Assembly: GCA_023334545.1 (NCBI GenBank)
Contig: JAADVB010000022.1
Span: 1 to 64,000, forward strand
Source of the DNA: Salisapilia sapeloensis CBS 127946
Lineage: Eukaryota > Protista > Oomycota
Length of the DNA stretch: 64,000 bases
Direction of reading: 5' to 3'
Shown: positions 3,936 to 44,867 of the stretch, one piece after another
Layout: every line of letters starts with the position of its first letter
How positions within the stretch are numbered: position 1 is the first letter of the stretch
Position numbers and translations under genes: made by a program
Notes under the pieces: model-generated
Told to the model about the DNA's origin: nothing
Database searches by the model: none
What the model saw: the letters and a program-made list of their open reading frames with translations, nothing else

Positions 3936-4385
3936 GGCTGTGCGTCTTGTGCGGCAGAATAGGAAATGAAGATTCCCTCGGATCTTGGAAGTTAGTCGAA
4001 CTTTGGTGGATAAAGCAATCTTAGACCGTTGTTCATCTCTCTCGTGCGGTATCTCTCCTTTTTTACATGGAAGAGACGACGGAGGAGGTCTTCGTTTGAA
4101 TGCATTAGAATAGTAACATAGACGTCATGATGGACAAGATGATATTGATACTATTTAGGTAAGCTCATGATGAAATGAGAGGGATGGAAATTTTACGAGG
4201 GATCTTCTACATGATCATCGCCTGAGTTTGACATCTGATGGCTAGGAAAGATTCAAAAGGAGTATGACAAGCAACGCATCATCATTGATATCTTCAATGG
4301 ACAGATGGAGCAACAAGTACCGGAATGAGATAAGCGAATGCATTTTATTGCCATGTGAAAAGAAATACTTTGAGAGAAATGAAGC

Positions 4386-5804
<1,419 letters not shown>

Positions 5805-6308
5805 CTACTCGAACCTGAAGAAGTCGAAAGTGTTTGAAGGAGGAAGCGCTAATTCGCAAATGGCAACGGTTAAGGCCTGAACGGATGCTTGGGAAAGAGT
5901 CGCGTCAGGCATGAAACGACTGGAAGGTTATGTCGTCCTTGTAATTTTCATAGACCAAAATAGGTTTGACTGTAGACTAATGTCTAAATAGGCTATTCAT
6001 GAAAGCGTGGGCTTCTTCGTCTGTAAACTACCGTCGACCGTTTTGCTGTACTCTTGAAAAAGAGATCCTACTAATCTGGAAATAGCTCTTCGTGCTTAAC
6101 ATGGTAAAAAGCAATAAAGTATCTGATTTAGCCATGACTAAAGTTGGAAGTTATTGACATGAGATAAGAATGCATTGCGTATGTGCCAAGAGTGTAAATG
6201 AAGCACGTGAGATGATGCTTCTGGCTACCATGATGCGTCGCACTTAAGATTGAAACGTCTTCCATCCTTTTGTACTTCGGCAACCCTTCAAGATCTCATC
6301 CGCCTTTC

Positions 6309-37111: not shown

Positions 37112-38149
37112 TTACACGTCTTCCGCAGCATCGCCATCCACCAAACGGTTCTCGTTCTCCAACTTCTCGATCATCTGGGCAAACTCCTTCTCGTCCGTCA
37201 CACTCACGACCTTGGGGGCCATCTTGACCTGCAACGTACCCTTCCGCTCTTCAATGTACGACCGCACTTGCTCCACGGCTTCCTGCAGTTTCTCAATACC
37301 CTTATTCTTGTCCAACGTGTTCGTCGTCATGACGTACATGGGCGGCGCAATAAGCTTCACCTTGATCGGAACGTCCTCCGTGCTCATGTCCTGAGCAGAA
37401 AGCAACGCGCCACGAATGGCGTCAATGCCTTCGTACGTGAAGCACGTGACTTCAATGTCAGCACGGACCTTAATTGGCTGCGGAGTCAGGCGTCGGGAGA
37501 TATGCGTGCGCAGTTGGTCACGCAGCTCGTCCGTGATATCGAGACCTTCAAAGACGGACTCGTCCGTGATGCCCATCTTGAACACGTCGTAGCAGTGGAA
37601 ATACTCGGTCTTTTTCTCATCGTCATTCTCCTTCTCGACCTTGAACTTCTTATACAAAGGCCACGCGATACGCTGGTACAAGTCCTCGATCTCACTACCA
37701 GTGTCCTGCGCAAGCTGTCGCAAGACGCCGTGAACCGTCTTGGCCTTGTTGTACCTTTCCTCGCACTTGGTGATGTCTTCAGGAGACACCCTGCGCTTGG
37801 ACAGATCGATGTATCCTTTTTCTTTGTCGACACGAAGTACCGTCACGACTTCGTTCTTACCGACTCGGATCAACTTATTGATCGACCGGATACGACGACG
37901 CGAGAGTTCCGACAAGAGGATCATACCTTCAATGTCATTGTACTCCAAAAGGGAGACGTACGCACCCATCTCTGCAATGCTGCGCACTTTGACCATGACG
38001 ATTTCATCCACTTCCGGGAACTTTTGCTCGTAAAATCGACTCTGGTACTTGAGCGCGTCGCCTTGCTCCGTCGGCTGGTCTTCCGGGGCGCCAAGAGCAG
38101 CATTCGCGGCTGCCGCAGCATTGCTCGCATTCGTTTCGGGGGTTGCCAT
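37112..38149 (-). CDS. EIF2S1: Eukaryotic translation initiation factor 2 alpha
   Basis: RFYEQKFPEVDEIVMVKV, LLEYNDIEGMILLSELSRRRIRSI (Ser51 site), GYIDLSKRRV and IKLIAPP. Confidence 0.97.
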   Translation of the reverse strand: MATPETNASNAAAAANAALGAPEDQPTEQGDALKYQSRFYEQKFPEVDEIVMVKVRSIAEMGAYVSLLEYNDIEGMILLSELSRRRIRSINKLIRVGKNEVVTVLRVDKEKGYIDLSKRRVSPEDITKCEERYNKAKTVHGVLRQLAQDTGSEIEDLYQRIAWPLYKKFKVEKENDDEKKTEYFHCYDVFKMGITDESVFEGLDITDELRDQLRTHISRRLTPQPIKVRADIEVTCFTYEGIDAIRGALLSAQDMSTEDVPIKVKLIAPPMYVMTTNTLDKNKGIEKLQEAVEQVRSYIEERKGTLQVKMAPKVVSVTDEKEFAQMIEKLENENRLVDGDAAEDV

Positions 38150-38378
38150 ACCTAAAAGAAGTGGAAGAGTAGACGTAGATCGGTTCTTCCCGTAGCTTTC
38201 GCTTTTGCTTGTCGTCCATCCAGGGTGCTGGACAGATGTTCCGATATACTAGCGATACATCTCTTTCCGATATACGACAATTAAGATCGAGTGGATGTAA
38301 AATTATGGATTGGCCACGCGCGAGGTACTTTTATCAGACGTGCTTTGAATCGGTATTTGGGACGGGCAGGAGATCGTC

Positions 38379-41300
38379 ATGTATGGATCGGTACCACTGC
38401 GGTCATTCATGACTCGACCTGCTCGAGTCGAGTCCGAGAATGAAGTTGAGCAATGGCAGGTGGTCAATACGACCATCCCGGTCGTTTGCAGTATCTTTGG
38501 TGTCATCATCTTTATGAGATTGGCATCGGTCGTCGGAGACGGAGGATTCCTCCCAGCGTTTGCAGTCATCTCCCTTGCCTTTATCATTACGCTTTTGACA
38601 GTTGGGTCTCTATCCGCCCTCGCTTCCGACAGTACGTACCTTCTTTGAACTCCTTTGGATCTCAAGTCTCATTGATATTATGATAGTCCCAGACAGCTCA
38701 GAAGAACGGGTCGATGGTCTATTCAATGCACTACGCTACTCGTTGGATGAGCAGATAGGTCAGATGATTGGTGGTATGCTCTGCGTGTCCTTTGGCGTAG
38801 GCATAGGCTACTATCTTCTCGGGTTTTCCGAGATTTCCATGTACTACTTTGGAGTGAGACTACCACACTCTGCAGCTTTACCTTGGAATCCTGATGGGTC
38901 ATGGAATACTGTTCTACTAGCTAGCATCCTCCTCGCTGCCTTGACCGTATCTTATGTGGCTGGTGTCAAGATATCGAGAACAGCACTTCGTTTCGTCTTC
39001 GTCATGGTCCTAATCGCCGTGTGCTCCAACCTGCTCCTTCTGCTCATTCCGAACCGCGTCACAAACACAGGCTTCGACATTGACGTCTTGCGCTCCAATA
39101 TGCTGCACGGTAGTGCAGAAAGCTATGTGAAAATGTTCTCCTCCTTCTTCCCAGCCTTTTGTGGCGTCATTGGCGGTGCCAACCTCGCGGAGAGTGTCAT
39201 GAAGCGGCCATCCTCATGGGCAATCACTACCTCTGGGGTAGTGCCAGACTCTGCTGCACAACTTGTTCTAGGCATTCATCATGGTCTGCTCTTCTCCTTC
39301 TTGGTGTATGTACTACTTGGCTTTGTCCTAGCTTCCTGCGTCAACCAGGAGGCACTGTCATCGAATAATTTTATCGTTGAAAAGATCGTAGACTCGATAA
39401 TTGGCGTGCCAGTCATATATTTTGGTATCGCGTGCACGACCCTCTCGTCTGCCCTATCGAACATCATGGGTGTCGCTAGCGTTCTTATGGCTCTCTTCTC
39501 TCCAAAGACCGTCCGTCCCGCGCCTTCCTTCTCTACTCCTCAGGATATCAACTCCATGAGCAACAACATTCTCTCTACTAGCAGCGTGTCAGAAGAAACG
39601 GACGGTTCGAGGTCGTCCAAGTCTGTCCTCTTTTGGACGTGGGCAATGGGACAGGCAGCCGTGTTAAGTGGCACCGTCGACGCAATCATCCCGATCGTCA
39701 GCGCCACCTTCCTTCTTACGTTTTTCGTCCTAAACTTTGCCTGCTTCTTCCAGGAGATCGCATCACCTAGCTTCAATCCTTTCTTCAAGCTCTACAGCAA
39801 GTATACCGCTCTCTTGGGTTGTATTCTCTCTCTTGGTGCCTTCTTTCTCATCGTCCAAGCTGTCTTCGTCGCACTTGCAGGCTTCTTCTTACTAGGCTTT
39901 GTCGTCTACCATCGCCATAACATTCACAGCATGTTGGAGCAGCTACGTGTTGTAGGTAGTGTCCGACAGCCTAGCAGAGGACGTTCCCGACGTTGCAATC
40001 TCACGAATGAAGAGATGATTTTATCTCCTCTAGGTTTCTCAACACTCGTCTCTCCTCGTGCCGAGGACAGTGATGAAGAAGTCGAGGTCGCGAATAAGAC
40101 TCGATTGAAATGGGCTGCTGTATACGTTCGCGACGCCATCCACGGTCGTTTCCTTGGAAAACAGTATCTTCTGGAAGGACTGCACAAGACAGAGTTTAAA
40201 CGTGCTTACCATGGCCTCCGCTTCGTCCGCACAGCCAACCTTTCCGTTCTTTTCCTCTTAACGTTTTTCGAAACGCCGTCTTGGTGCTACTTCTTGCCTT
40301 CTTGTGGTTCTCCAGAAAAGGTTTTGACGTGGAATCTGCCGATGCTAGCGCCAAGCACATCGACATTGATTGAGCTCATCTGCTTGACGCTTCTTGCAGT
40401 TGAGATGGGCATGAAGTACACGTACATGGGTTATCGACTGTACTTTGTCAACAAATGGCACTCGTTGCAGATGCTTGTGATCTTTGCAGACTTCATCGCG
40501 GTAGTGGTTGCGACAACCGTTCCAGTCCAAACTGAAGAGTCTGTACATAAAGGTAATGCTTCGCCTCCGATGGTCTTGGCTCCATTGATCCGTCCGCTCA
40601 TTCTACTGTCGATGAGTCATCGTCTTCGATCCGGTTTCTCTAGTCTACTCCGTGCTATGCCGAGGTTTACGGACGGCTTACTCACTTTGGGTGCGCTCAT
40701 TGCCTTGTACGCCGTCTGTGGCATGGTATTGTTTGAAGGCACGGAGGAAGGGAAGCTGTACTTTTCTAATTTCGAGGATGCGTGTTTAAACCTGTTAATC
40801 TTGATGACGACTGCCAACTTCCCAGACGTGATGCTCCCGATCTACAACGAGTGGCGATCTGCAAGCATCTTCTTTGTGAGCTTCCTCGCGATTGCTCTGT
40901 TCTTAGTGATGAATCTCGTCTTTGCGTCGGTGTACCAGAGTTATCGCCAAGAGATCCGTCAACGAGCACTCGAGTACTCGAACAATCGATACCAGTCGTT
41001 GGAAGTGGCGTTTAAACTGCTTCCAGAGAAGAACATATCGGATAGTGAAGAGGACGATGCACAGAATCAAGAAAAGGTGATCTCGAAAGCGACATATGAA
41101 AAACTCTTGTCAGAACTTATGCGGCCAACCTTTTCTATCTTCACTGCTCCATCAAAAAGGAAGAACACACGATCGAGTCGTCGACAGAACTTTTCTGTCC
41201 TCGGTCATGACGACGATGAAGAAAGTCAGTCGATTAGCTTTGTTCAATTCGTATCTATGATTCGTTCCTTCGCGTCTCGACAGCAAGCTCGTTCACGTCG

Positions 41301-42381
41301 AAAGCGAAAGATGAAACCTTCGAAAGAGAATCCACATCGAGTAGTCAATGCGATCAAAGCATTTCTAGAAGGAGGCCGCTTTGAGCATGTGATCGACGGT
41401 ATTATCCTAGGCAATCTTGTAGCCATCTTGTTTGAGGTGCAGGCCAAGATTGATGACAATGCTACTGGCGGCGACAGTTTTGTGTCTTGGGAAAGGTACA
41501 TGCCGATTTTTACTGCATTTTACCTCGTCGAAATGCTTTTAAAGATGTATGTCCGAGGAGTTGGCCGGTATTTTGATCGGCCGAAGAATGTTTATGACTG
41601 TGTCGTCACCCTTGTAATCACTGTGGCTGAAATCAGTGTGCATGCACATTACTCGAGTGCAGCGGAATGGACGTGGGCGAGAGCTCTTCTACTCTTGCGT
41701 TTCCTCCGTTGTCTTCGATTGCTAGTGGCGCTGCATTCGCTTAACTCCATGTTCGCCATCGTCGTACGTCTGTTACCAGCCTTTACGACCCTGTACGGCA
41801 TGCTCGGTATCATCGTGACCATGTACGCGGTGGTGGGCATCCAGCTCTTTGGCGGAAAGTTGACGAAAGGTGATCCGACGTTGGAAGCACTTTCGTATGG
41901 CCAGAACAATTATTACAGCATCAATTTTAACGACTTTGCGTCTGCTTTGACGACGCTCTTTTCCTTGCTGGTCGTCAATAACTGGTTTTTACCCATGCAT
42001 GCCGCTGTGGCCGTCACGAACCGCTGGAATCGACTGTATTTTGTCAGCTTTTACATTGTCGGCGTCGTCATGGTATTGAATTTGGTGGTAGCGTTTGTCG
42101 TGGAAGCGTACTTTGAAGAGGTTTCTGCAGTTGAATCAAGTGCGAGGAAGCGAATGCAGAGCTCGGAGAGCAATGGTAACTTGGCGGGGATGAGTAATCA
42201 AAAGGAAGAGGACGAACCAGCAACTCCGAAGAAACGAAGACGCAAGTCTTTCACGGCCATGTCCATGAACGAAGACAATGATGAGGATGAGACGCAACAG
42301 GCGCAACATATACTTCGAAAGCGGTCGTCGATGGCTATGCGACCTCGAGGTGATAGCATCTACATTGAAGACTACTTGTAG
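38379..42381 (+). CDS. Fusion protein: SLC12/APC-like transporter core followed by a two-pore channel (TPC); intron 38632-38686
   Basis: N-half: PVVCSIFGVIIFMRLASVVG, YYLLGFSE, FFPAFCGVIGGAN, TTLSSAL, NFACF and PSFNPFFKLY. C-half: AAVYVRDAIHGR, TFFETPSW, pore 1 LMTTANFPDVMLP, S4 RFLRCLRLL and pore 2 FSLLVVNNW...VLNLVVAFVVEAY. No stop codon between the halves. Confidence 0.85.
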
Positions 42382-42656
42382 CTAGACGCCTATGATTAGG
42401 GCATGCCACGATTTCGTTTCTCGGCATCGAGATTGATGCAAAAATCGAAGCTCCCAGCCAACCATTGAGTCAAAACGCATCGACAGATCCGTCCTGCTAA
42501 AAAAGTACCTGTGCATGCATACTGAAAGCTTAAAGAAATAGATCTTCAAATTGTGGAACTGTATGACTTAAACATTCGCCGACCGGAACTGCTTGCGAGA
42601 TCGGAAGTTGTTCATTCCTCTTCTTGCCTGATTCAACTAAAGGCGACTCTGGAACA

Positions 42657-44867
42657 ATGGGTCTGCTAGTGGAAGGGCGTCCGATGGACTGGGACGAATC
42701 GCTCGACTGGTTGCAGTACGTGCGAGAGCACGGGATTGACCAGTTCCTGCACGTCTACCAGCGCGTCAAAGGTATTTCTGGCGATGTCCTCAAATGGGGC
42801 GATGAACTCGAATACGGCATCTTTCAAATGGACAAGAGTACGCGTACACCAAAGCTATCATTGCGTGGTGCTGAACTAATGCACCAACTCAATGACCTCG
42901 AGCGTCAGAACGGTGCGCATGAAGGCGATGGATGTAATTGGGTGCCAGAGTACGGCTCGTGGATGATCGAAAGCACGCCGAGTGCTCCGTACGGTGGTTT
43001 CACGAGCGATTTGCACAAGGTGGAGCCCAATATGCGTCTTCGTCGAGCTCGATTACTCGAATTATTGCGTGATGATGAGATTGCACCGTCCGTTACGGCG
43101 TTCCCAATGATGGGTGTTGGCCAGCACACGACACCTCCATCCAAGCCGAATGGGCCGGTGGCCACATCAGACTACATTGGTGATGAAATCATCAATCCAC
43201 ACCCGCGTTTCGCAGCCTTGACACGAAACATTCGTAAGCGTCGAGGACGCAAGGTGGACATTCGAGTCCCGCTGTTCCAAGATGTGTACACTAGCCAAAT
43301 GCTAGCGGAAGAAAAGTGGGTCGCAGAACATACGCGACCACAATATGAAAGTAAGACAACGAAAAGCCCAACTGCCAAGGATGAGTCGCCTACGAACGGA
43401 AACCCTAGCAATGGTCACAAGCATCACGGCATGTGTCACGCAGTCGAACAAGCAGAGCCGCATCCAGGATACATCCACATGGATGCCATGGCTTTCGGCA
43501 TGGGCATGTGCTGTCTACAAGTGACGTTCCAGGCAAAGGATTTGGGCGAGTCGAGGCATTTATACGACCATTTGGCAGTCTTGTCTCCTATCATGCTGGC
43601 GTTGACGGCTGCAACGCCAGTGCTTAAGGGCCGACTGGCAGACACGGACGTTCGATGGGCGACGATCTCTGCTGGTGTCGATGACCGTACGCCCCAGGAG
43701 CTCGGTGAAGCTTCTCCACCTGAAGACGAAGAGACGAAAGCAAAGTACGCCAAGATGGCTGGTAACGGCGTCAAGCGTTTACCAAAGTCTCGATACGAAG
43801 GTATCTCGACGTACATTTGCAACCATAAAGCAGGTGAAGACCCACACACGTCGACGGACAATTACAATGACGTCGAAGTGCCGTATGATGAAAAGTCGTA
43901 CGAGAAGTTGATCGCCAACGGCGTTGACCGTCTACTCGCATTGCACGTCTCGCACTTGTTTATTCGCGACCCGCTCGTTATCTATGAACAACGCATCAAA
44001 CTAGACGACGAACTTGCCACAGACCACTTTGAGAACATCCAATCGACCAACTGGCAGACGGTCCGTTGGAAACCGCCACCGCCGCCTTCGAGCGATGACG
44101 ACTCGCACGTTGGATGGCGAACCGAGTTCCGATCGATGGAGATCCAGCTCACAGACTTTGAGAATGCTGCTTTCACGGTCTTTGTGGCACTCGTCTCGCG
44201 CGTCATCCTGACGTTCGACTTGAACTTGTACATCCCCTTGTCTCGCGTGAATGAGAACATGGAGGCGGCGCATCGAGTCAATGCTGTGCTGGACGAAAAG
44301 TTTGCTTTCCGTAGCCACTTGGCACCTCCAGAAGCTGATGACTGCATTTCCGGCTCATCTCACTGTGAAGTGCATGAGAATGAAGATCGATTCGAGATGA
44401 TGACGATCGCTGAGATCATGCTTGGCAAGCACTCGTACTTCCCAGGCCTCATTCCTCTTGTCTACGCGTACCTCGACTCGATTAACTGCGACCAGAACAC
44501 GCGTGAGCTCGTGGACAAATACCTGAGCTTCATCGCCAAGCGTGCAACGGGTGAGCTCCCGACTGCCGCGACATGGATGCGACGCTTCATCCGCGCGCAT
44601 CCGGACTATGCCCACGACTCGGTCGTCACGAACGACATTGCGTTTGATCTGCTGCAAGAATGTCAGGCCATTGGTGACGGATCGAAGCAGAACCACGAGT
44701 TGCTTGGTGAGTTCCAGATCGAACCTGTGCGTGGTCGCGTCGCGTACCAAGTACCGTTGAAGAGCGAAGGCGTGGCGACGAGTCAACGTCAAAAACTCTT
44801 GCGTCGCTACATGAACCGAGACACGAACAAGCAGTCTGGCGCGTGCAAGGAATGTGCGCCTGAATAA
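42657..44867 (+). CDS. GCLC: Glutamate-cysteine ligase catalytic subunit (eukaryotic/group 2 type)
   Basis: MGLLVEG, LKWGDELEY, PEYGSWMIESTP, MDAMAFGMGMCCLQVTFQ, HFENIQSTNWQTVRWKPP, GWRTEFR and TDFENAA. Confidence 0.96.
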   Translation: MGLLVEGRPMDWDESLDWLQYVREHGIDQFLHVYQRVKGISGDVLKWGDELEYGIFQMDKSTRTPKLSLRGAELMHQLNDLERQNGAHEGDGCNWVPEYGSWMIESTPSAPYGGFTSDLHKVEPNMRLRRARLLELLRDDEIAPSVTAFPMMGVGQHTTPPSKPNGPVATSDYIGDEIINPHPRFAALTRNIRKRRGRKVDIRVPLFQDVYTSQMLAEEKWVAEHTRPQYESKTTKSPTAKDESPTNGNPSNGHKHHGMCHAVEQAEPHPGYIHMDAMAFGMGMCCLQVTFQAKDLGESRHLYDHLAVLSPIMLALTAATPVLKGRLADTDVRWATISAGVDDRTPQELGEASPPEDEETKAKYAKMAGNGVKRLPKSRYEGISTYICNHKAGEDPHTSTDNYNDVEVPYDEKSYEKLIANGVDRLLALHVSHLFIRDPLVIYEQRIKLDDELATDHFENIQSTNWQTVRWKPPPPPSSDDDSHVGWRTEFRSMEIQLTDFENAAFTVFVALVSRVILTFDLNLYIPLSRVNENMEAAHRVNAVLDEKFAFRSHLAPPEADDCISGSSHCEVHENEDRFEMMTIAEIMLGKHSYFPGLIPLVYAYLDSINCDQNTRELVDKYLSFIAKRATGELPTAATWMRRFIRAHPDYAHDSVVTNDIAFDLLQECQAIGDGSKQNHELLGEFQIEPVRGRVAYQVPLKSEGVATSQRQKLLRRYMNRDTNKQSGACKECAPE

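What the first reader, a model, noticed from the sequence alone, without database searches (positions are those of the whole stretch)
38379..42381. Single polypeptide fusing an SLC12-like transporter to a complete two-pore cation channel
After one short intron, an uninterrupted ORF of about 1,230 codons encodes an SLC12/APC core (TM1 PVVCSIFGVIIFMR, TM3 YYLLGFSE, TM6 FFPAFCGVIGGAN, TM8 TTLSSAL, TM10-12). A roughly 60-aa linker leads into a full 2x6TM TPC (AAVYVRDAIHGR, FETPSW, TTANFPD, a degenerate EF-hand-like linker, an S4 arginine ladder and VVNNW). Established: TPCs and SLC12A9-like transporters are separate endolysosomal/vacuolar proteins in animals and plants. Inference: the fusion could physically couple anion/cation or solute transport (or sensing) to organellar Na+/Ca2+ release, for example in zoospore osmoregulation or encystment. 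I am not aware of this chimera being characterised.
Basis: partly seen in the sequence, partly recalled or inferred. Interest (0 to 1): 0.8.

Follow-up and report, generated by a model that had tools for sequence, protein, structure and literature searches.

The report
Natural SLC12 transporter–two-pore channel fusion
One oomycete gene, made as a single spliced mRNA, joins a salt-cotransporter-type membrane domain to a complete two-pore cation channel, and this chimera is an old, conserved and apparently unstudied protein family.

Summary
ATG 38379, a 55-nt GT..AG intron (38632-38686) and an open exon to the stop at 42379-42381 encode 1,315 aa. Assembled RNA contigs from two samples carry the spliced gene end to end with no mismatch, so it is one mRNA and not a misassembly.

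Residues ~30-492 are an SLC12/CCC-type 12-TM core. Every solved-structure hit is SLC12, but the SLC12 cytosolic C-domain is missing. A ~60-aa poorly conserved linker of low model confidence leads into a complete two-pore channel, aligned to AtTPC1 residues 70-697. Its filters are the animal type (TAN / VNN), IIS4 keeps three arginines, and no EF-hand is detectable.

The fusion is collinear in Phytophthora, Pythium, Globisporangium and Lagenidium, and in several metagenomic lineages, at least one of which is not an oomycete. Trees of each half separate all fused proteins from the unfused relatives sampled (support 99), which fits one old fusion. All fused proteins have Phe at the TM10 chloride-site tyrosine. 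In the transporter half, 10 of the 11 listed differences from a close relative are synonymous.

Function is inferred only: a dimeric complex pairing a cation(-chloride) transporter with a voltage-gated, Na+-preferring channel. I found no paper on it. Note s1-303522 covers this same stretch.

The parts
38360..42571 (+). Assembled mRNA: short 5' UTR (~19 nt), CDS, and 3' UTR of ~165-190 nt
   Evidence: The run X1 contig of 4,157 nt covers 38360-38631 + 38687-42571. The run X4 contig of 4,121 nt covers 38370-38631 + 38687-42545. Both have 0 mismatches and 0 gaps. The downstream gene has its own contig starting at 42584 / 42549.
38379..38631 (+). Exon 1 of the CDS (aa 1-84 plus the first base of codon 85), encoding TM1-TM2 of the SLC12-type core
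   Evidence: All 32 PDB hits of these 84 aa are SLC12 chains (KCC3 4.6e-7); SIFGVIIFMRL aligns with NIFGVILFLRL.
38632..38686 (+). 55-nt intron, GTACGT...AG
   Evidence: The joint 38631->38687 is seen in contigs of X1, X4 and X5. The reading frames of the two exons join only with this splice or one 6 nt longer, and the RNA uses 38686.
38687..42381 (+). Exon 2 of the CDS (aa 85-1315 plus the stop at 42379-42381). It is uninterrupted across the transporter/channel junction.
38466..39909 (+). SLC12/CCC-type 12-TM (LeuT-fold) transporter domain, aa ~30-492 (the intron lies inside this range). There is no SLC12 C-terminal domain.
   Evidence: PDB sequence hits are SLC12 (NCC 5e-14, NKCC1 2.5e-8, KCCs), apart from one E = 0.36 chance match. 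Foldseek hits NCC/NKCC1 TM domains at E 2e-8 to 1e-7, TMt ~0.6. PF03522 is not found.
39721..39723 (+). Codon of F430 (TM10), the position of the chloride-site-2 tyrosine of canonical CCCs
   Evidence: NCC Y540 aligns with this Phe. The position is Phe in all fused proteins with a residue there (22 of 23) and Tyr in 9 of 10 canonical SLC12 proteins.
39910..40092 (+). Cytosolic linker, aa ~493-553: variable, with low predicted order
   Evidence: Identity to orthologues is 10-32% here, against 36-70% in the next bin. AF2 pLDDT is below 50 for model residues 412-461, which are aa 497-546.
40093..42120 (+). Complete two-pore channel, aa ~554-1229: N-terminal helix, 6-TM domain I, inter-domain linker, 6-TM domain II
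   Evidence: AtTPC1 6e-70, aligned to residues 70-697. Pfam Ion_trans in 2 stretches. Foldseek AtTPC1 6e-20 and human TPC2 2e-18.
40810..40818 (+). Pore filter I, T793-A794-N795
   Evidence: TTANFPD is conserved in most fused proteins and matches TTANNPD of animal TPC2.
40969..41373 (+). Inter-domain cytosolic linker (aa ~846-980) in the position of the plant TPC1 EF-hand pair. No recognisable EF-hand.
   Evidence: No EF-hand family in Pfam at E<=0.01. Loop positions are non-canonical and variable. Parts have pLDDT below 50.
41680..41718 (+). IIS4 voltage-sensor charges R1083, R1089, R1092, R1095
   Evidence: RFLRCLRLL aligns with RLLRLIRLL of a plant-type TPC. Animal TPC2 lacks the first of the three.
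41974..41982 (+). Pore filter II, V1181-N1182-N1183
   Evidence: VVNNW is as in animal TPC2 and in 5tua ('Na+-selective mutant of AtTPC1'). Wild-type AtTPC1 has VMGNW.
42121..42378 (+). C-terminal cytosolic tail (aa 1230-1315), variable except for the terminal motif RPRGDSIYIEDYL (42340-42378)
   Evidence: RPR(A/G)DS(I/V)Y(V/I)E(E/D)(F/Y)L ends nearly every oomycete orthologue. pLDDT is below 50.

Best explanation
Shown. This is one gene, one spliced mRNA and one 1,315-aa open reading frame. The N-terminal part is an SLC12/cation-chloride-cotransporter-type 12-TM core that has lost the family's cytosolic C-terminal domain. It is tied by a ~60-aa flexible cytosolic linker to a complete two-pore channel. 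The chimera has been inherited as a unit in oomycetes and in other, unnamed eukaryotic lineages, and both halves are under purifying selection.

Inferred mechanism.
- The protein assembles as a dimer through the TPC pore, as all TPCs do. This places two transporter modules in the same complex and may replace the dimerising role of the missing SLC12 C-domain.
- Both SLC12 and TPC have cytosolic N- and C-termini, so the linker stays in the cytosol and the two parts insert in their native orientation.
- The channel half is predicted to be voltage-gated (three IIS4 arginines), Na+-preferring (animal-type TAN/VNN filters) and not Ca2+-activated through EF-hands.
- The transporter half is predicted still to bind and move a cation, with altered chloride handling. 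Cl-site 1, the TM3 and TM7 tyrosines and the TM8 Ser-Ser are kept. The TM10 tyrosine is Phe in the whole family. The TM6 Thr is Cys in most oomycete members.

The most likely purpose is fixed 1:1 co-expression, co-targeting and local coupling of an electroneutral cation(-chloride) carrier with a conductive cation path in one membrane, probably endolysosomal or vacuolar. The channel would recycle or shunt the co-transported cation. This resembles cation recycling through channels beside NKCC-type carriers, giving net salt and osmolyte movement.

Likelihoods: real fused gene and protein at least 0.95; both halves functional about 0.7; the recycling/shunt coupling specifically about 0.4.
For: - Single mRNA: contigs of two RNA samples cover 38360/38370-42571/42545 with only the 55-nt intron removed and 0 mismatches. 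A ~95%-identical relative shows the same splice and a 439-nt contig over 39662-40100.
- Continuous ORF of 1,315 aa.
- SLC12 identity: plus Foldseek TMt ~0.6 to NCC/NKCC1 TM domains. No PF03522.
- TPC identity: AtTPC1 6e-70 over residues 70-697 and Foldseek 6e-20.
- Fusion conserved: full-length collinear orthologues at 26-54% identity in the N-terminal bins and up to 78% in the channel core. In syntenic locus L001 a single exon spans TM12, the linker and most of the TPC. In non-oomycete L002 one tblastn HSP covers aa 33-826 in one frame. Further fused proteins are P0126, P0273 and P0279-P0289.
- One origin: fused versus canonical is a single branch in both half-trees, with the same subclades.
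- Selection: 10 synonymous and 1 conservative change among the 11 listed differences in the N-half. The unwound TM1 and TM6 segments and the TM8 and TM10 motifs are nearly invariant among oomycetes.
- Filters and S4. Swapping the TPC2 filter II into AtTPC1 gives Na+ selectivity (10.1101/181578).
- Linker disorder.
Against: - No functional, localisation or protein-level data exist.
- The RNA evidence is assembled contigs, not single long reads. An additional internal transcription start giving a TPC-only isoform, or cleavage of the protein after translation, is not excluded.
- The oomycete clade sits on a long stem (1.49 changes per site). It has lost several SLC12-invariant residues: the TM6 Thr, the SGDL motif and the GG.Y / LGP.GG glycines. 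This could mean the carrier cycle is lost.
- Mutating the TM10 Tyr reduces or abolishes transport in KCC1/3/4, NKCC1, NCC and SLC12A9, although KCC2 Y569F keeps 71% activity (PMC10518353; 10.1101/2023.05.22.541801).
- Only 8 unfused TPCs were in the TPC tree, and none was a named plant TPC1.
- pTM of 0.56 gives no information on how the two halves pack.
Confidence: 0.55

Rival explanations
1. Transceptor model. The SLC12-type core no longer carries net flux. It binds luminal or cytosolic ions (Cl-, Na+/K+/NH4+) and passes its conformational state through the linker, or through a membrane interface, to gate the two-pore channel. The chimera would then be an ion-sensing channel.
For: There is a family-wide Tyr->Phe change at the TM10 chloride site, and the oomycete clade has lost further SLC12-invariant residues. 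The stem branch is long. The EF-hand sensor of plant-type TPCs is not recognisable, so another regulatory input would be needed. The ligand-site segments stay conserved. An earlier first-reader note (s1-303522) proposed the same idea.
Against: The linker is ~60 aa, variable and predicted disordered, which makes it a poor rigid transmitter. The cation-site Tyr, Cl-site 1 and the Ser-Ser pair are kept as in working carriers. Y->F at this position leaves KCC2 with 71% activity (PMC10518353). No sensor-only SLC12 is known to me (own knowledge).
Confidence: 0.25
2. Scaffold or targeting model. The N-terminal domain is a transport-dead membrane module kept for folding, trafficking, dimer stability or partner binding. 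Only the channel is active.
For: AA_permease scores below the Pfam cut-off in the window protein. Canonical glycines of the TM2-TM3 region are replaced in this copy (D94, D105). The C-domain is lost.
Against: Ten of the 11 listed differences from a close relative are synonymous. The most conserved N-half segments are the substrate-site helices rather than surface or interface helices. A 460-aa, 12-TM domain has been kept across very deep divergences, down to 28-33% identity.
Confidence: 0.12
3. Not a functional fusion. Two adjacent genes are read through or merged by assembly, or the polyprotein is cleaved, so the cell has separate transporter and channel proteins.
For: Oomycete genes are tightly packed, and here the next gene's transcript starts within 4-13 nt of this one's end. 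Short-read contigs can merge overlapping transcripts. Prokaryote-style gene calls split some relatives into pieces.
Against: There is no stop codon or frame change between the halves. The junction lies inside one exon here, in L001 and in L002. Wherever genomic DNA was examined, the splits fall at introns and the pieces stay collinear. More than 20 independent genomes or metagenomes keep the same order and frame. Both half-trees share one topology. No unfused orthologue was found.
Confidence: 0.05

Closest known systems
Two-pore channels: plant TPC1 (AtTPC1, e.g. 5e1j, 7fhk) and animal TPC1/TPC2/TPC3 (6c96, 6nq0, 6v1q)
   Same: There are two tandem 6-TM Ion_trans repeats in one chain, aligned over AtTPC1 residues 70-697. 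The filters carry neutral Asn residues (TAN / VNN, identical to animal TPC2). IIS4 has three arginines, as in the voltage-gated TPC1 and TPC3. An N-terminal cytosolic helix precedes IS1.
   Different: The protein carries a 12-TM transporter on its N-terminus, so the TPC N-terminus is internal. No EF-hands are recognisable in the inter-domain linker. Only one of the three IS4-S5 lysines aligned with animal TPC2 is kept as a basic residue; I identify these from memory as the PI(3,5)P2-binding residues. The tail ends in a conserved RPRxDSIYxExxL motif.
SLC12 / cation-chloride cotransporters (NKCC1, NCC, KCC1-4, SLC12A9/CIP1)
   Same: The 12-TM LeuT-fold core has the CCC signatures: TM1 xIFGVxxFxRL, TM3 Y..GF(S/A)E, TM6 FFPxxxGxxxGxN, TM8 TLSSAL, and the TM10-TM11 loop SPxFxPxFxxYS. 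Cl-site 1 (G-V-I), the TM3 Tyr, the TM7 Tyr and the TM8 Ser-Ser are present.
   Different: There is no SLC12 C-terminal domain (PF03522), the part that dimerises and regulates canonical CCCs. The TM10 chloride-site Tyr is Phe. The TM1 Asn is Ser. In most oomycete members the TM6 Thr is Cys and SGDL is replaced by AExx. The extracellular loops are short. In the tree the group lies outside all canonical SLC12 proteins sampled, SLC12A9 included.
SLC9C1, the sperm Na+/H+ exchanger with a fused voltage-sensing domain and cyclic-nucleotide-binding domain (comparison from my own knowledge, not tested here)
   Same: It is a secondary transporter covalently joined to modules of the voltage-gated channel superfamily.
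   Different: SLC9C1 carries only a voltage sensor, with no pore. Here a whole pore-forming channel is attached, and the transporter belongs to a different fold family.
Other oomycete/SAR membrane chimeras: PKD-RyR-domain channels (PMC4820453), P4-ATPase-guanylate cyclase (PMC13466520), GPCR-PIPK 'bigrams' (PMC6033456)
   Same: They are lineage-typical fusions of two membrane or signalling modules, conserved across oomycetes. Oomycete genomes are noted to favour gene fusion (PMC4820453).
   Different: None of them joins a secondary-active ion transporter to an ion channel.

Membership tests
Two-pore channel (TPC) | Two tandem 6-TM voltage-gated-type (Ion_trans) repeats in one polypeptide | tested here: met
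   Pfam PF00520 in 2 stretches, 2e-51. A single alignment covers AtTPC1 70-697 at 6e-70. Foldseek gives AtTPC1 6e-20 and TPC2 2e-18.
Two-pore channel (TPC) | Pore loops with the TPC filter asparagines (filter I T-x-N, filter II x-N-N or x-G-N) | tested here: met
   T793-A794-N795 and V1181-N1182-N1183, identical to animal TPC2 and to the Na+-selective AtTPC1 mutant 5tua.
Two-pore channel (TPC) | Charged S4 in the second voltage sensor (voltage-gated TPC1/TPC3 type) | tested here: met
   R1089, R1092 and R1095 align with the three IIS4 arginines of AtTPC1 and the plant-type TPC P0029.
Two-pore channel (TPC) | Cytosolic EF-hand pair between the repeats (plant TPC1 subtype) | tested here: not met
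   No EF-hand family at E<=0.01. The aligned loops lack the canonical D-x-D-x-D-G...E pattern. This excludes the plant-TPC1 subtype only, not the TPC family.
Two-pore channel (TPC) | Homodimer forming a pseudo-tetrameric pore; endolysosomal or vacuolar location | not testable with these tools
   Needs a multimer model or structure, and localisation experiments.
SLC12 / cation-chloride cotransporter | 12-TM APC/LeuT-fold core with CCC sequence signatures | tested here: met
   All significant PDB sequence hits of exon 1 and of the N-half are SLC12. Foldseek TMt is 0.58-0.62 to NCC/NKCC1 TM domains. The nearest non-fused relatives all carry PF00324 + PF03522.
SLC12 / cation-chloride cotransporter | Large cytosolic C-terminal SLC12 domain (PF03522) | tested here: not met
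   No PF03522 hit. About 60 aa after TM12 the TPC begins.
SLC12 / cation-chloride cotransporter | Chloride site 2: TM6 main chain plus the TM10 tyrosine | tested here: not met
   F430 replaces NCC Y540 / KCC2 Y569 / SLC12A9 Y429. The position is Phe in every fused protein with a residue there.
SLC12 / cation-chloride cotransporter | Chloride site 1 (TM1 G-V-I) and cation-site residues (TM1 N-I, TM3 Y, TM6 P and T; TM8 S-S for Na+) | tested here: inconclusive
   G41-V42-I43, I39, Y127, P240 and S338-S339 are kept. N->S38 and T->C243 are changed (site definitions from PMC10518353).
SLC12 / cation-chloride cotransporter | Electroneutral cation-chloride cotransport | not testable with these tools
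   Needs flux assays.
SLC12A9 (CIP1) subfamily | Groups with SLC12A9 to the exclusion of other CCCs | tested here: not met
   In the tree of 57 transporter cores, SLC12A9 lies inside the canonical SLC12 side, and all fused proteins lie across a branch with SH-aLRT 99. SLC12A9 is merely the best named unfused hit, at 28%, for a distant fused member.

The most novel reading that the evidence does not exclude
The SLC12-TPC chimera could be an ancient, single-origin class of covalently coupled transporter-channel machines. In this reading, ion occupancy or the alternating-access cycle of the SLC12 core directly gates, or is gated by, the attached two-pore channel. That would be a gating and coupling mode not described for either family, and it would give these protists a self-contained organellar salt and volume valve.
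Probability: 0.2. Interest if true: 0.85.

Novelty: new variant of a known kind. Interest (0 to 1): 0.62.

Why it matters
Channels and secondary transporters that work together, such as NKCC-type carriers with recycling cation channels or lysosomal carriers with TPCs, are normally separate proteins, and their coupling is hard to prove. Here evolution has welded a cation-chloride-type carrier to a two-pore channel and kept the weld across very deep divergences.

This gives TPC and CCC biologists three things:
- a natural construct for asking whether a carrier and a channel talk to each other;
- a TPC whose dimerisation may stand in for the SLC12 C-domain;
- a family-wide natural Tyr->Phe variant of the chloride site.

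The protein has no counterpart in plants or animals, so it is also a lineage-specific membrane protein of a group that includes major crop and fish pathogens.

The claim is tempered on several counts. The sequences are already in public databases under uninformative names. The components are well known. No function has been shown.

Tried and rejected
- Naming the organism. Exact look-up of the neighbouring eIF2-alpha and glutamate-cysteine ligase proteins found neither in the collection. The best named orthologue of the fusion is only 50-51% identical. eIF2-alpha is 78% identical to that of the Globisporangium-like locus L001. The lineage therefore stays 'an oomycete without a close sequenced relative in these databases'.
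- ESM Atlas search. It returned only generic AA_permease clusters at scores of 0.75 or less, and no cluster with the fused architecture.
- Suspected unfused relatives. P0026-P0028 (~690 aa, TPC only) and P0121 (transporter only) looked unfused. P0026 and P0121 lie on one contig (L001) as pieces of a five-exon fused gene. P0135 (AA_permease only) is likewise followed on the same strand by Ion_trans pieces.
- Taxonomy of the distant fused clade through the RPA2 gene on L002. It shows only that the organism is not an oomycete. Named hits are at most 45% identical, with stramenopiles about equal to fungi.
- The 'SLC12A9-like' reading was rejected on the tree.
- Papers not held. Guo et al. 2017 (PMC5293054) and Seidl et al. 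2011 (PMC3032455) could not be read. Seidl et al. list oomycete-specific domain pairs and might already include this one.
- Earlier notes. A word search of the scan's notes found nothing, and the genome-wide 'channel' notes concern other genes.
- Not attempted: typing the spliced protein into the structure tool. The model therefore lacks TM1-TM2 and the last 30 residues.


Full report
**Observation.** The window holds an ORF at 38602..42381 (+), preceded by a short ORF from ATG 38379 in another frame. Between them lies GTACGT...AG. Laying public RNA-run contigs on 38150-42750 settled the gene model. Two samples of the same organism (runs X1 and X4) each give one contig. X1 is 4,157 nt covering 38360-38631 joined to 38687-42571. 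X4 is 4,121 nt covering 38370-38631 joined to 38687-42545. Both have no mismatch and no gap. A ~95%-identical relative (X5) shows the same 55-nt GT..AG skip and has a 439-nt contig across 39662-40100. The downstream gene has its own contigs starting at 42584 and 42549. The spliced CDS is 3,948 nt, giving 1,315 aa with a single terminal stop. One caveat remains: these are assembled contigs, so an extra internal start site cannot be excluded.

**The two halves.** Pfam sees Ion_trans twice (2e-51) but AA_permease only below threshold. Against solved structures the picture is clear. The 84 aa of exon 1 hit only SLC12 chains (KCC3 4.6e-7; SIFGVIIFMRL against NIFGVILFLRL). The next 470 aa hit SLC12 chains (NCC 5e-14, NKCC1 2.5e-8, KCC1-4), apart from one E = 0.36 chance match. 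The C-terminal 751 aa align in one piece with AtTPC1 residues 70-697 at 6e-70.

An AlphaFold2 model of exon-2 residues 1-1200 was built with 24 aligned family members (mean pLDDT 69, pTM 0.56). By Foldseek it matches AtTPC1 (6e-20) and human TPC2 (2e-18). Separately it matches the NCC and NKCC1 membrane domains (E 2e-8 to 1e-7, TMt 0.58-0.62), although TM1-TM2 were missing from the model. No SLC12 C-terminal domain (PF03522) is present. Hydropathy and homology place TM12 at about aa 469-491 and IS1 at about aa 597. The conserved TPC N-terminal helix (LAAxYVRDAIHGRFLG) starts near aa 554. That leaves a ~60-aa linker that is variable among orthologues and has pLDDT below 50. SLC12 cores and TPCs both have cytosolic N- and C-termini (established knowledge), so a 12-TM + 12-TM fusion keeps both native orientations.

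**Conservation of the fusion.** The protein search returned full-length collinear proteins carrying PF00324 + PF00520 from these species:
- Globisporangium splendens
- Phytophthora nicotianae, P. pseudosyringae, P. ramorum, P. fragariae and P. cinnamomi
- Lagenidium giganteum
- Pythium oligandrum
- Nothophytophthora (its rows list PF00520 only)

Identity to the window protein is 40-52%. They align from the N-terminal MYG to the C-terminal motif, with 26-54% identity in the first N-terminal bins and up to 78% in the channel core.

Three TPC-only hits of ~690 aa turned out to be gene-call fragments. P0026 lies on the same Logan contig (L001) as a transporter-only fragment, downstream of eIF2-alpha exactly as in the window. 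L001 encodes a five-exon version of the gene in which one exon (3949-6010) runs from TM12 through the linker and most of the channel.

An exhaustive HMMER search with the transporter half alone found 762 relatives. The closest are nearly all fused proteins or fragments of them. Next come canonical SLC12 proteins with PF03522. A second search found more fused proteins of 1,150-1,440 aa from metagenomes and EukProt, at only 28-33% identity to the window protein. One of these, on contig L002, has aa 33-826 of the window protein matched in a single frame. It sits beside an RNA-polymerase-I subunit whose best named relatives are only 44-45% identical, whether oomycete, other stramenopile or fungus, so that organism is not an oomycete. 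No unfused orthologue was found.

**Origin.** In a maximum-likelihood tree of 57 transporter cores, 34 canonical SLC12 proteins (fish SLC12A9 and bird NCC among them) and all 23 fused proteins are separated by one branch (SH-aLRT 99). The oomycete proteins form a clade (100) on a long stem of 1.49 changes per site. In a tree of the channel halves, 20 fused and 8 unfused TPCs are again split by one branch (99), with the same subclades. This fits a single old fusion followed by vertical descent. Three limits apply: the trees are unrooted, they come from quick searches, and the sample of unfused TPCs is small. The transporter half is therefore a separate SLC12 branch, not a member of the SLC12A9 group.

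**State of the transporter half.** Site definitions for cation-chloride cotransporters are taken from PMC10518353.

| Site | Window residues | State |
|---|---|---|
| Chloride site 1 | G41-V42-I43 | kept |
| Cation site | I39, Y127, P240 | kept |
| Cation site | S38 (canonical Asn), C243 (canonical Thr) | changed |
| TM7 tyrosine | Y292 | kept |
| TM8 Ser-Ser, Na+-coupled members | S338-S339 | kept |
| TM10 tyrosine, chloride site 2 (NCC Y540, KCC2 Y569, SLC12A9 Y429) | F430 | changed |

The TM10 position is Phe in every fused protein of every clade that has a residue there, and Tyr in 9 of 10 canonical proteins. Mutating this tyrosine reduces or abolishes transport in several CCCs, but KCC2 Y569F keeps 71% activity (PMC10518353). 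SLC12A9 Y429A fails to rescue (10.1101/2023.05.22.541801). The oomycete clade alone has also changed the TM6 Thr (Cys in most members, Ser in Lagenidium, retained in Pythium oligandrum), replaced SGDL with AExx, and lost several invariant glycines.

Against decay, 10 of the 11 listed differences from the ~95% relative in this half are synonymous and one is V209I. The substrate-site helices are also the most conserved parts of the domain among oomycetes. I conclude that the domain is functional but has altered anion handling. Whether it still transports cannot be decided here.

**State of the channel half.** Filter I is T793-A794-N795 and filter II is V1181-N1182-N1183, as in animal TPC2. Wild-type AtTPC1 entries read TTSNN and VMGNW. 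The one entry reading TTANN and VVNNW is 5tua, titled 'Na+-selective mutant of AtTPC1'. Exchanging filter II of AtTPC1 for that of TPC2 gives a Na+-selective channel (10.1101/181578). IIS4 keeps R1089, R1092 and R1095, as in voltage-gated plant TPC1, whereas animal TPC2 lacks the first. The inter-domain linker has no detectable EF-hand. Only one of the three IS4-S5 lysines aligned with animal TPC2 is conserved as a basic residue; I identify these from memory as the PI(3,5)P2-binding residues. The predicted phenotype is a voltage-gated, Na+-preferring channel that is not Ca2+-activated through EF-hands. All of this is inference from sequence.

**Mechanism.** The best-supported reading is a dimer held by the TPC pore that carries two SLC12-type modules, with TPC dimerisation perhaps replacing the lost SLC12 C-domain. 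The fusion would enforce 1:1 expression and co-targeting of an electroneutral cation(-chloride) carrier and a conductive cation path in one membrane. The channel would recycle or shunt the carried cation. The membrane is probably endolysosomal or vacuolar, by analogy with TPCs and lysosomal SLC12A9.

I rate the gene and protein fusion at 0.95 or higher, both halves active at about 0.7, and this particular coupling at about 0.4. The rivals are a transceptor that gates the channel (0.25), a transport-dead scaffold or targeting domain (0.12), and separate products through an internal start or cleavage (0.05).

**Novelty.** Reviews of oomycete and stramenopile Ca2+ channels count TPC homologues without mentioning an attached transporter (PMC4820453; PMC11085791). 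Six further full-text searches found no description of the chimera. The 2011 catalogue of oomycete-specific domain pairs could not be read and may list it. The proteins are in public databases as 'two pore calcium channel protein 1', 'Ion transport domain-containing protein' or 'hypothetical protein'. I class this as a new variant of known kinds: real, conserved, uncharacterised, and of clear interest to channel and transporter specialists, but built from well-known parts and with no function shown. The scan's other note on this stretch (s1-303522) reads the same DNA and agrees about the missing C-domain and the altered ion sites.

Noticed in passing
window 37112-38149 (-) and 38150-38360; L001 545-1561 (-): eIF2-alpha lies head-to-head with the fusion gene, about 210 nt from its transcript start. 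The same arrangement is kept in the Globisporangium-like contig L001, where eIF2-alpha is 78% identical. The two genes may share a bidirectional promoter region.
   Followed up: partly
window 42340-42378: The protein ends in RPRGDSIYIEDYL. RPR(A/G)DS(I/V)Y(V/I)E(E/D)(F/Y)L closes nearly every oomycete orthologue although the rest of the tail is variable. It contains an RxRxxS basophilic-kinase-type site and could be a sorting or regulatory signal. The N-terminus MYG is also conserved.
   Followed up: partly
window 42545-42584: The fusion mRNA ends at 42545 or 42571, and the contig of the next gene (glutamate-cysteine ligase, ORF 42624-44867) begins at 42549 or 42584. The two transcripts are therefore separated by only about 4-13 nt.
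   Followed up: no
window 41977: One low-depth contig of the ~95% relative (run X5, depth 3.1) lacks one base inside the filter II codons (gtc aat aac). The contig of run X6 over the same place does not. This may be an assembly error or a polymorphic frameshift.
   Followed up: no
L002 10001-14148 and 14294-18313: A metagenomic contig from a non-oomycete eukaryote carries a fused SLC12-TPC gene with one ~90-nt intron in IS6. Its RPA2 is 80% identical to a EukProt protein named g4714.t1. Another fused protein (P0280) comes from a EukProt set that uses the same naming style (g3304.t1), so a cultured protist with this fusion may already be in EukProt.
   Followed up: partly
P0029 (Logan, 741 aa): This unfused TPC of unknown origin has the plant-type filter II VMGNW and canonical-looking EF-hand loops. 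It was the closest unfused TPC to the window's channel half in the word-based search, at 27% identity.
   Followed up: no
window 39453-39566 (aa ~356-392): The cytosolic loop between TM8 and TM9 is Ser/Thr-rich and poorly conserved, with 2-26% identity to orthologues and pLDDT below 50. It may be a phospho-regulatory loop, in a protein that lacks the usual SLC12 N- and C-terminal regulatory regions.
   Followed up: no
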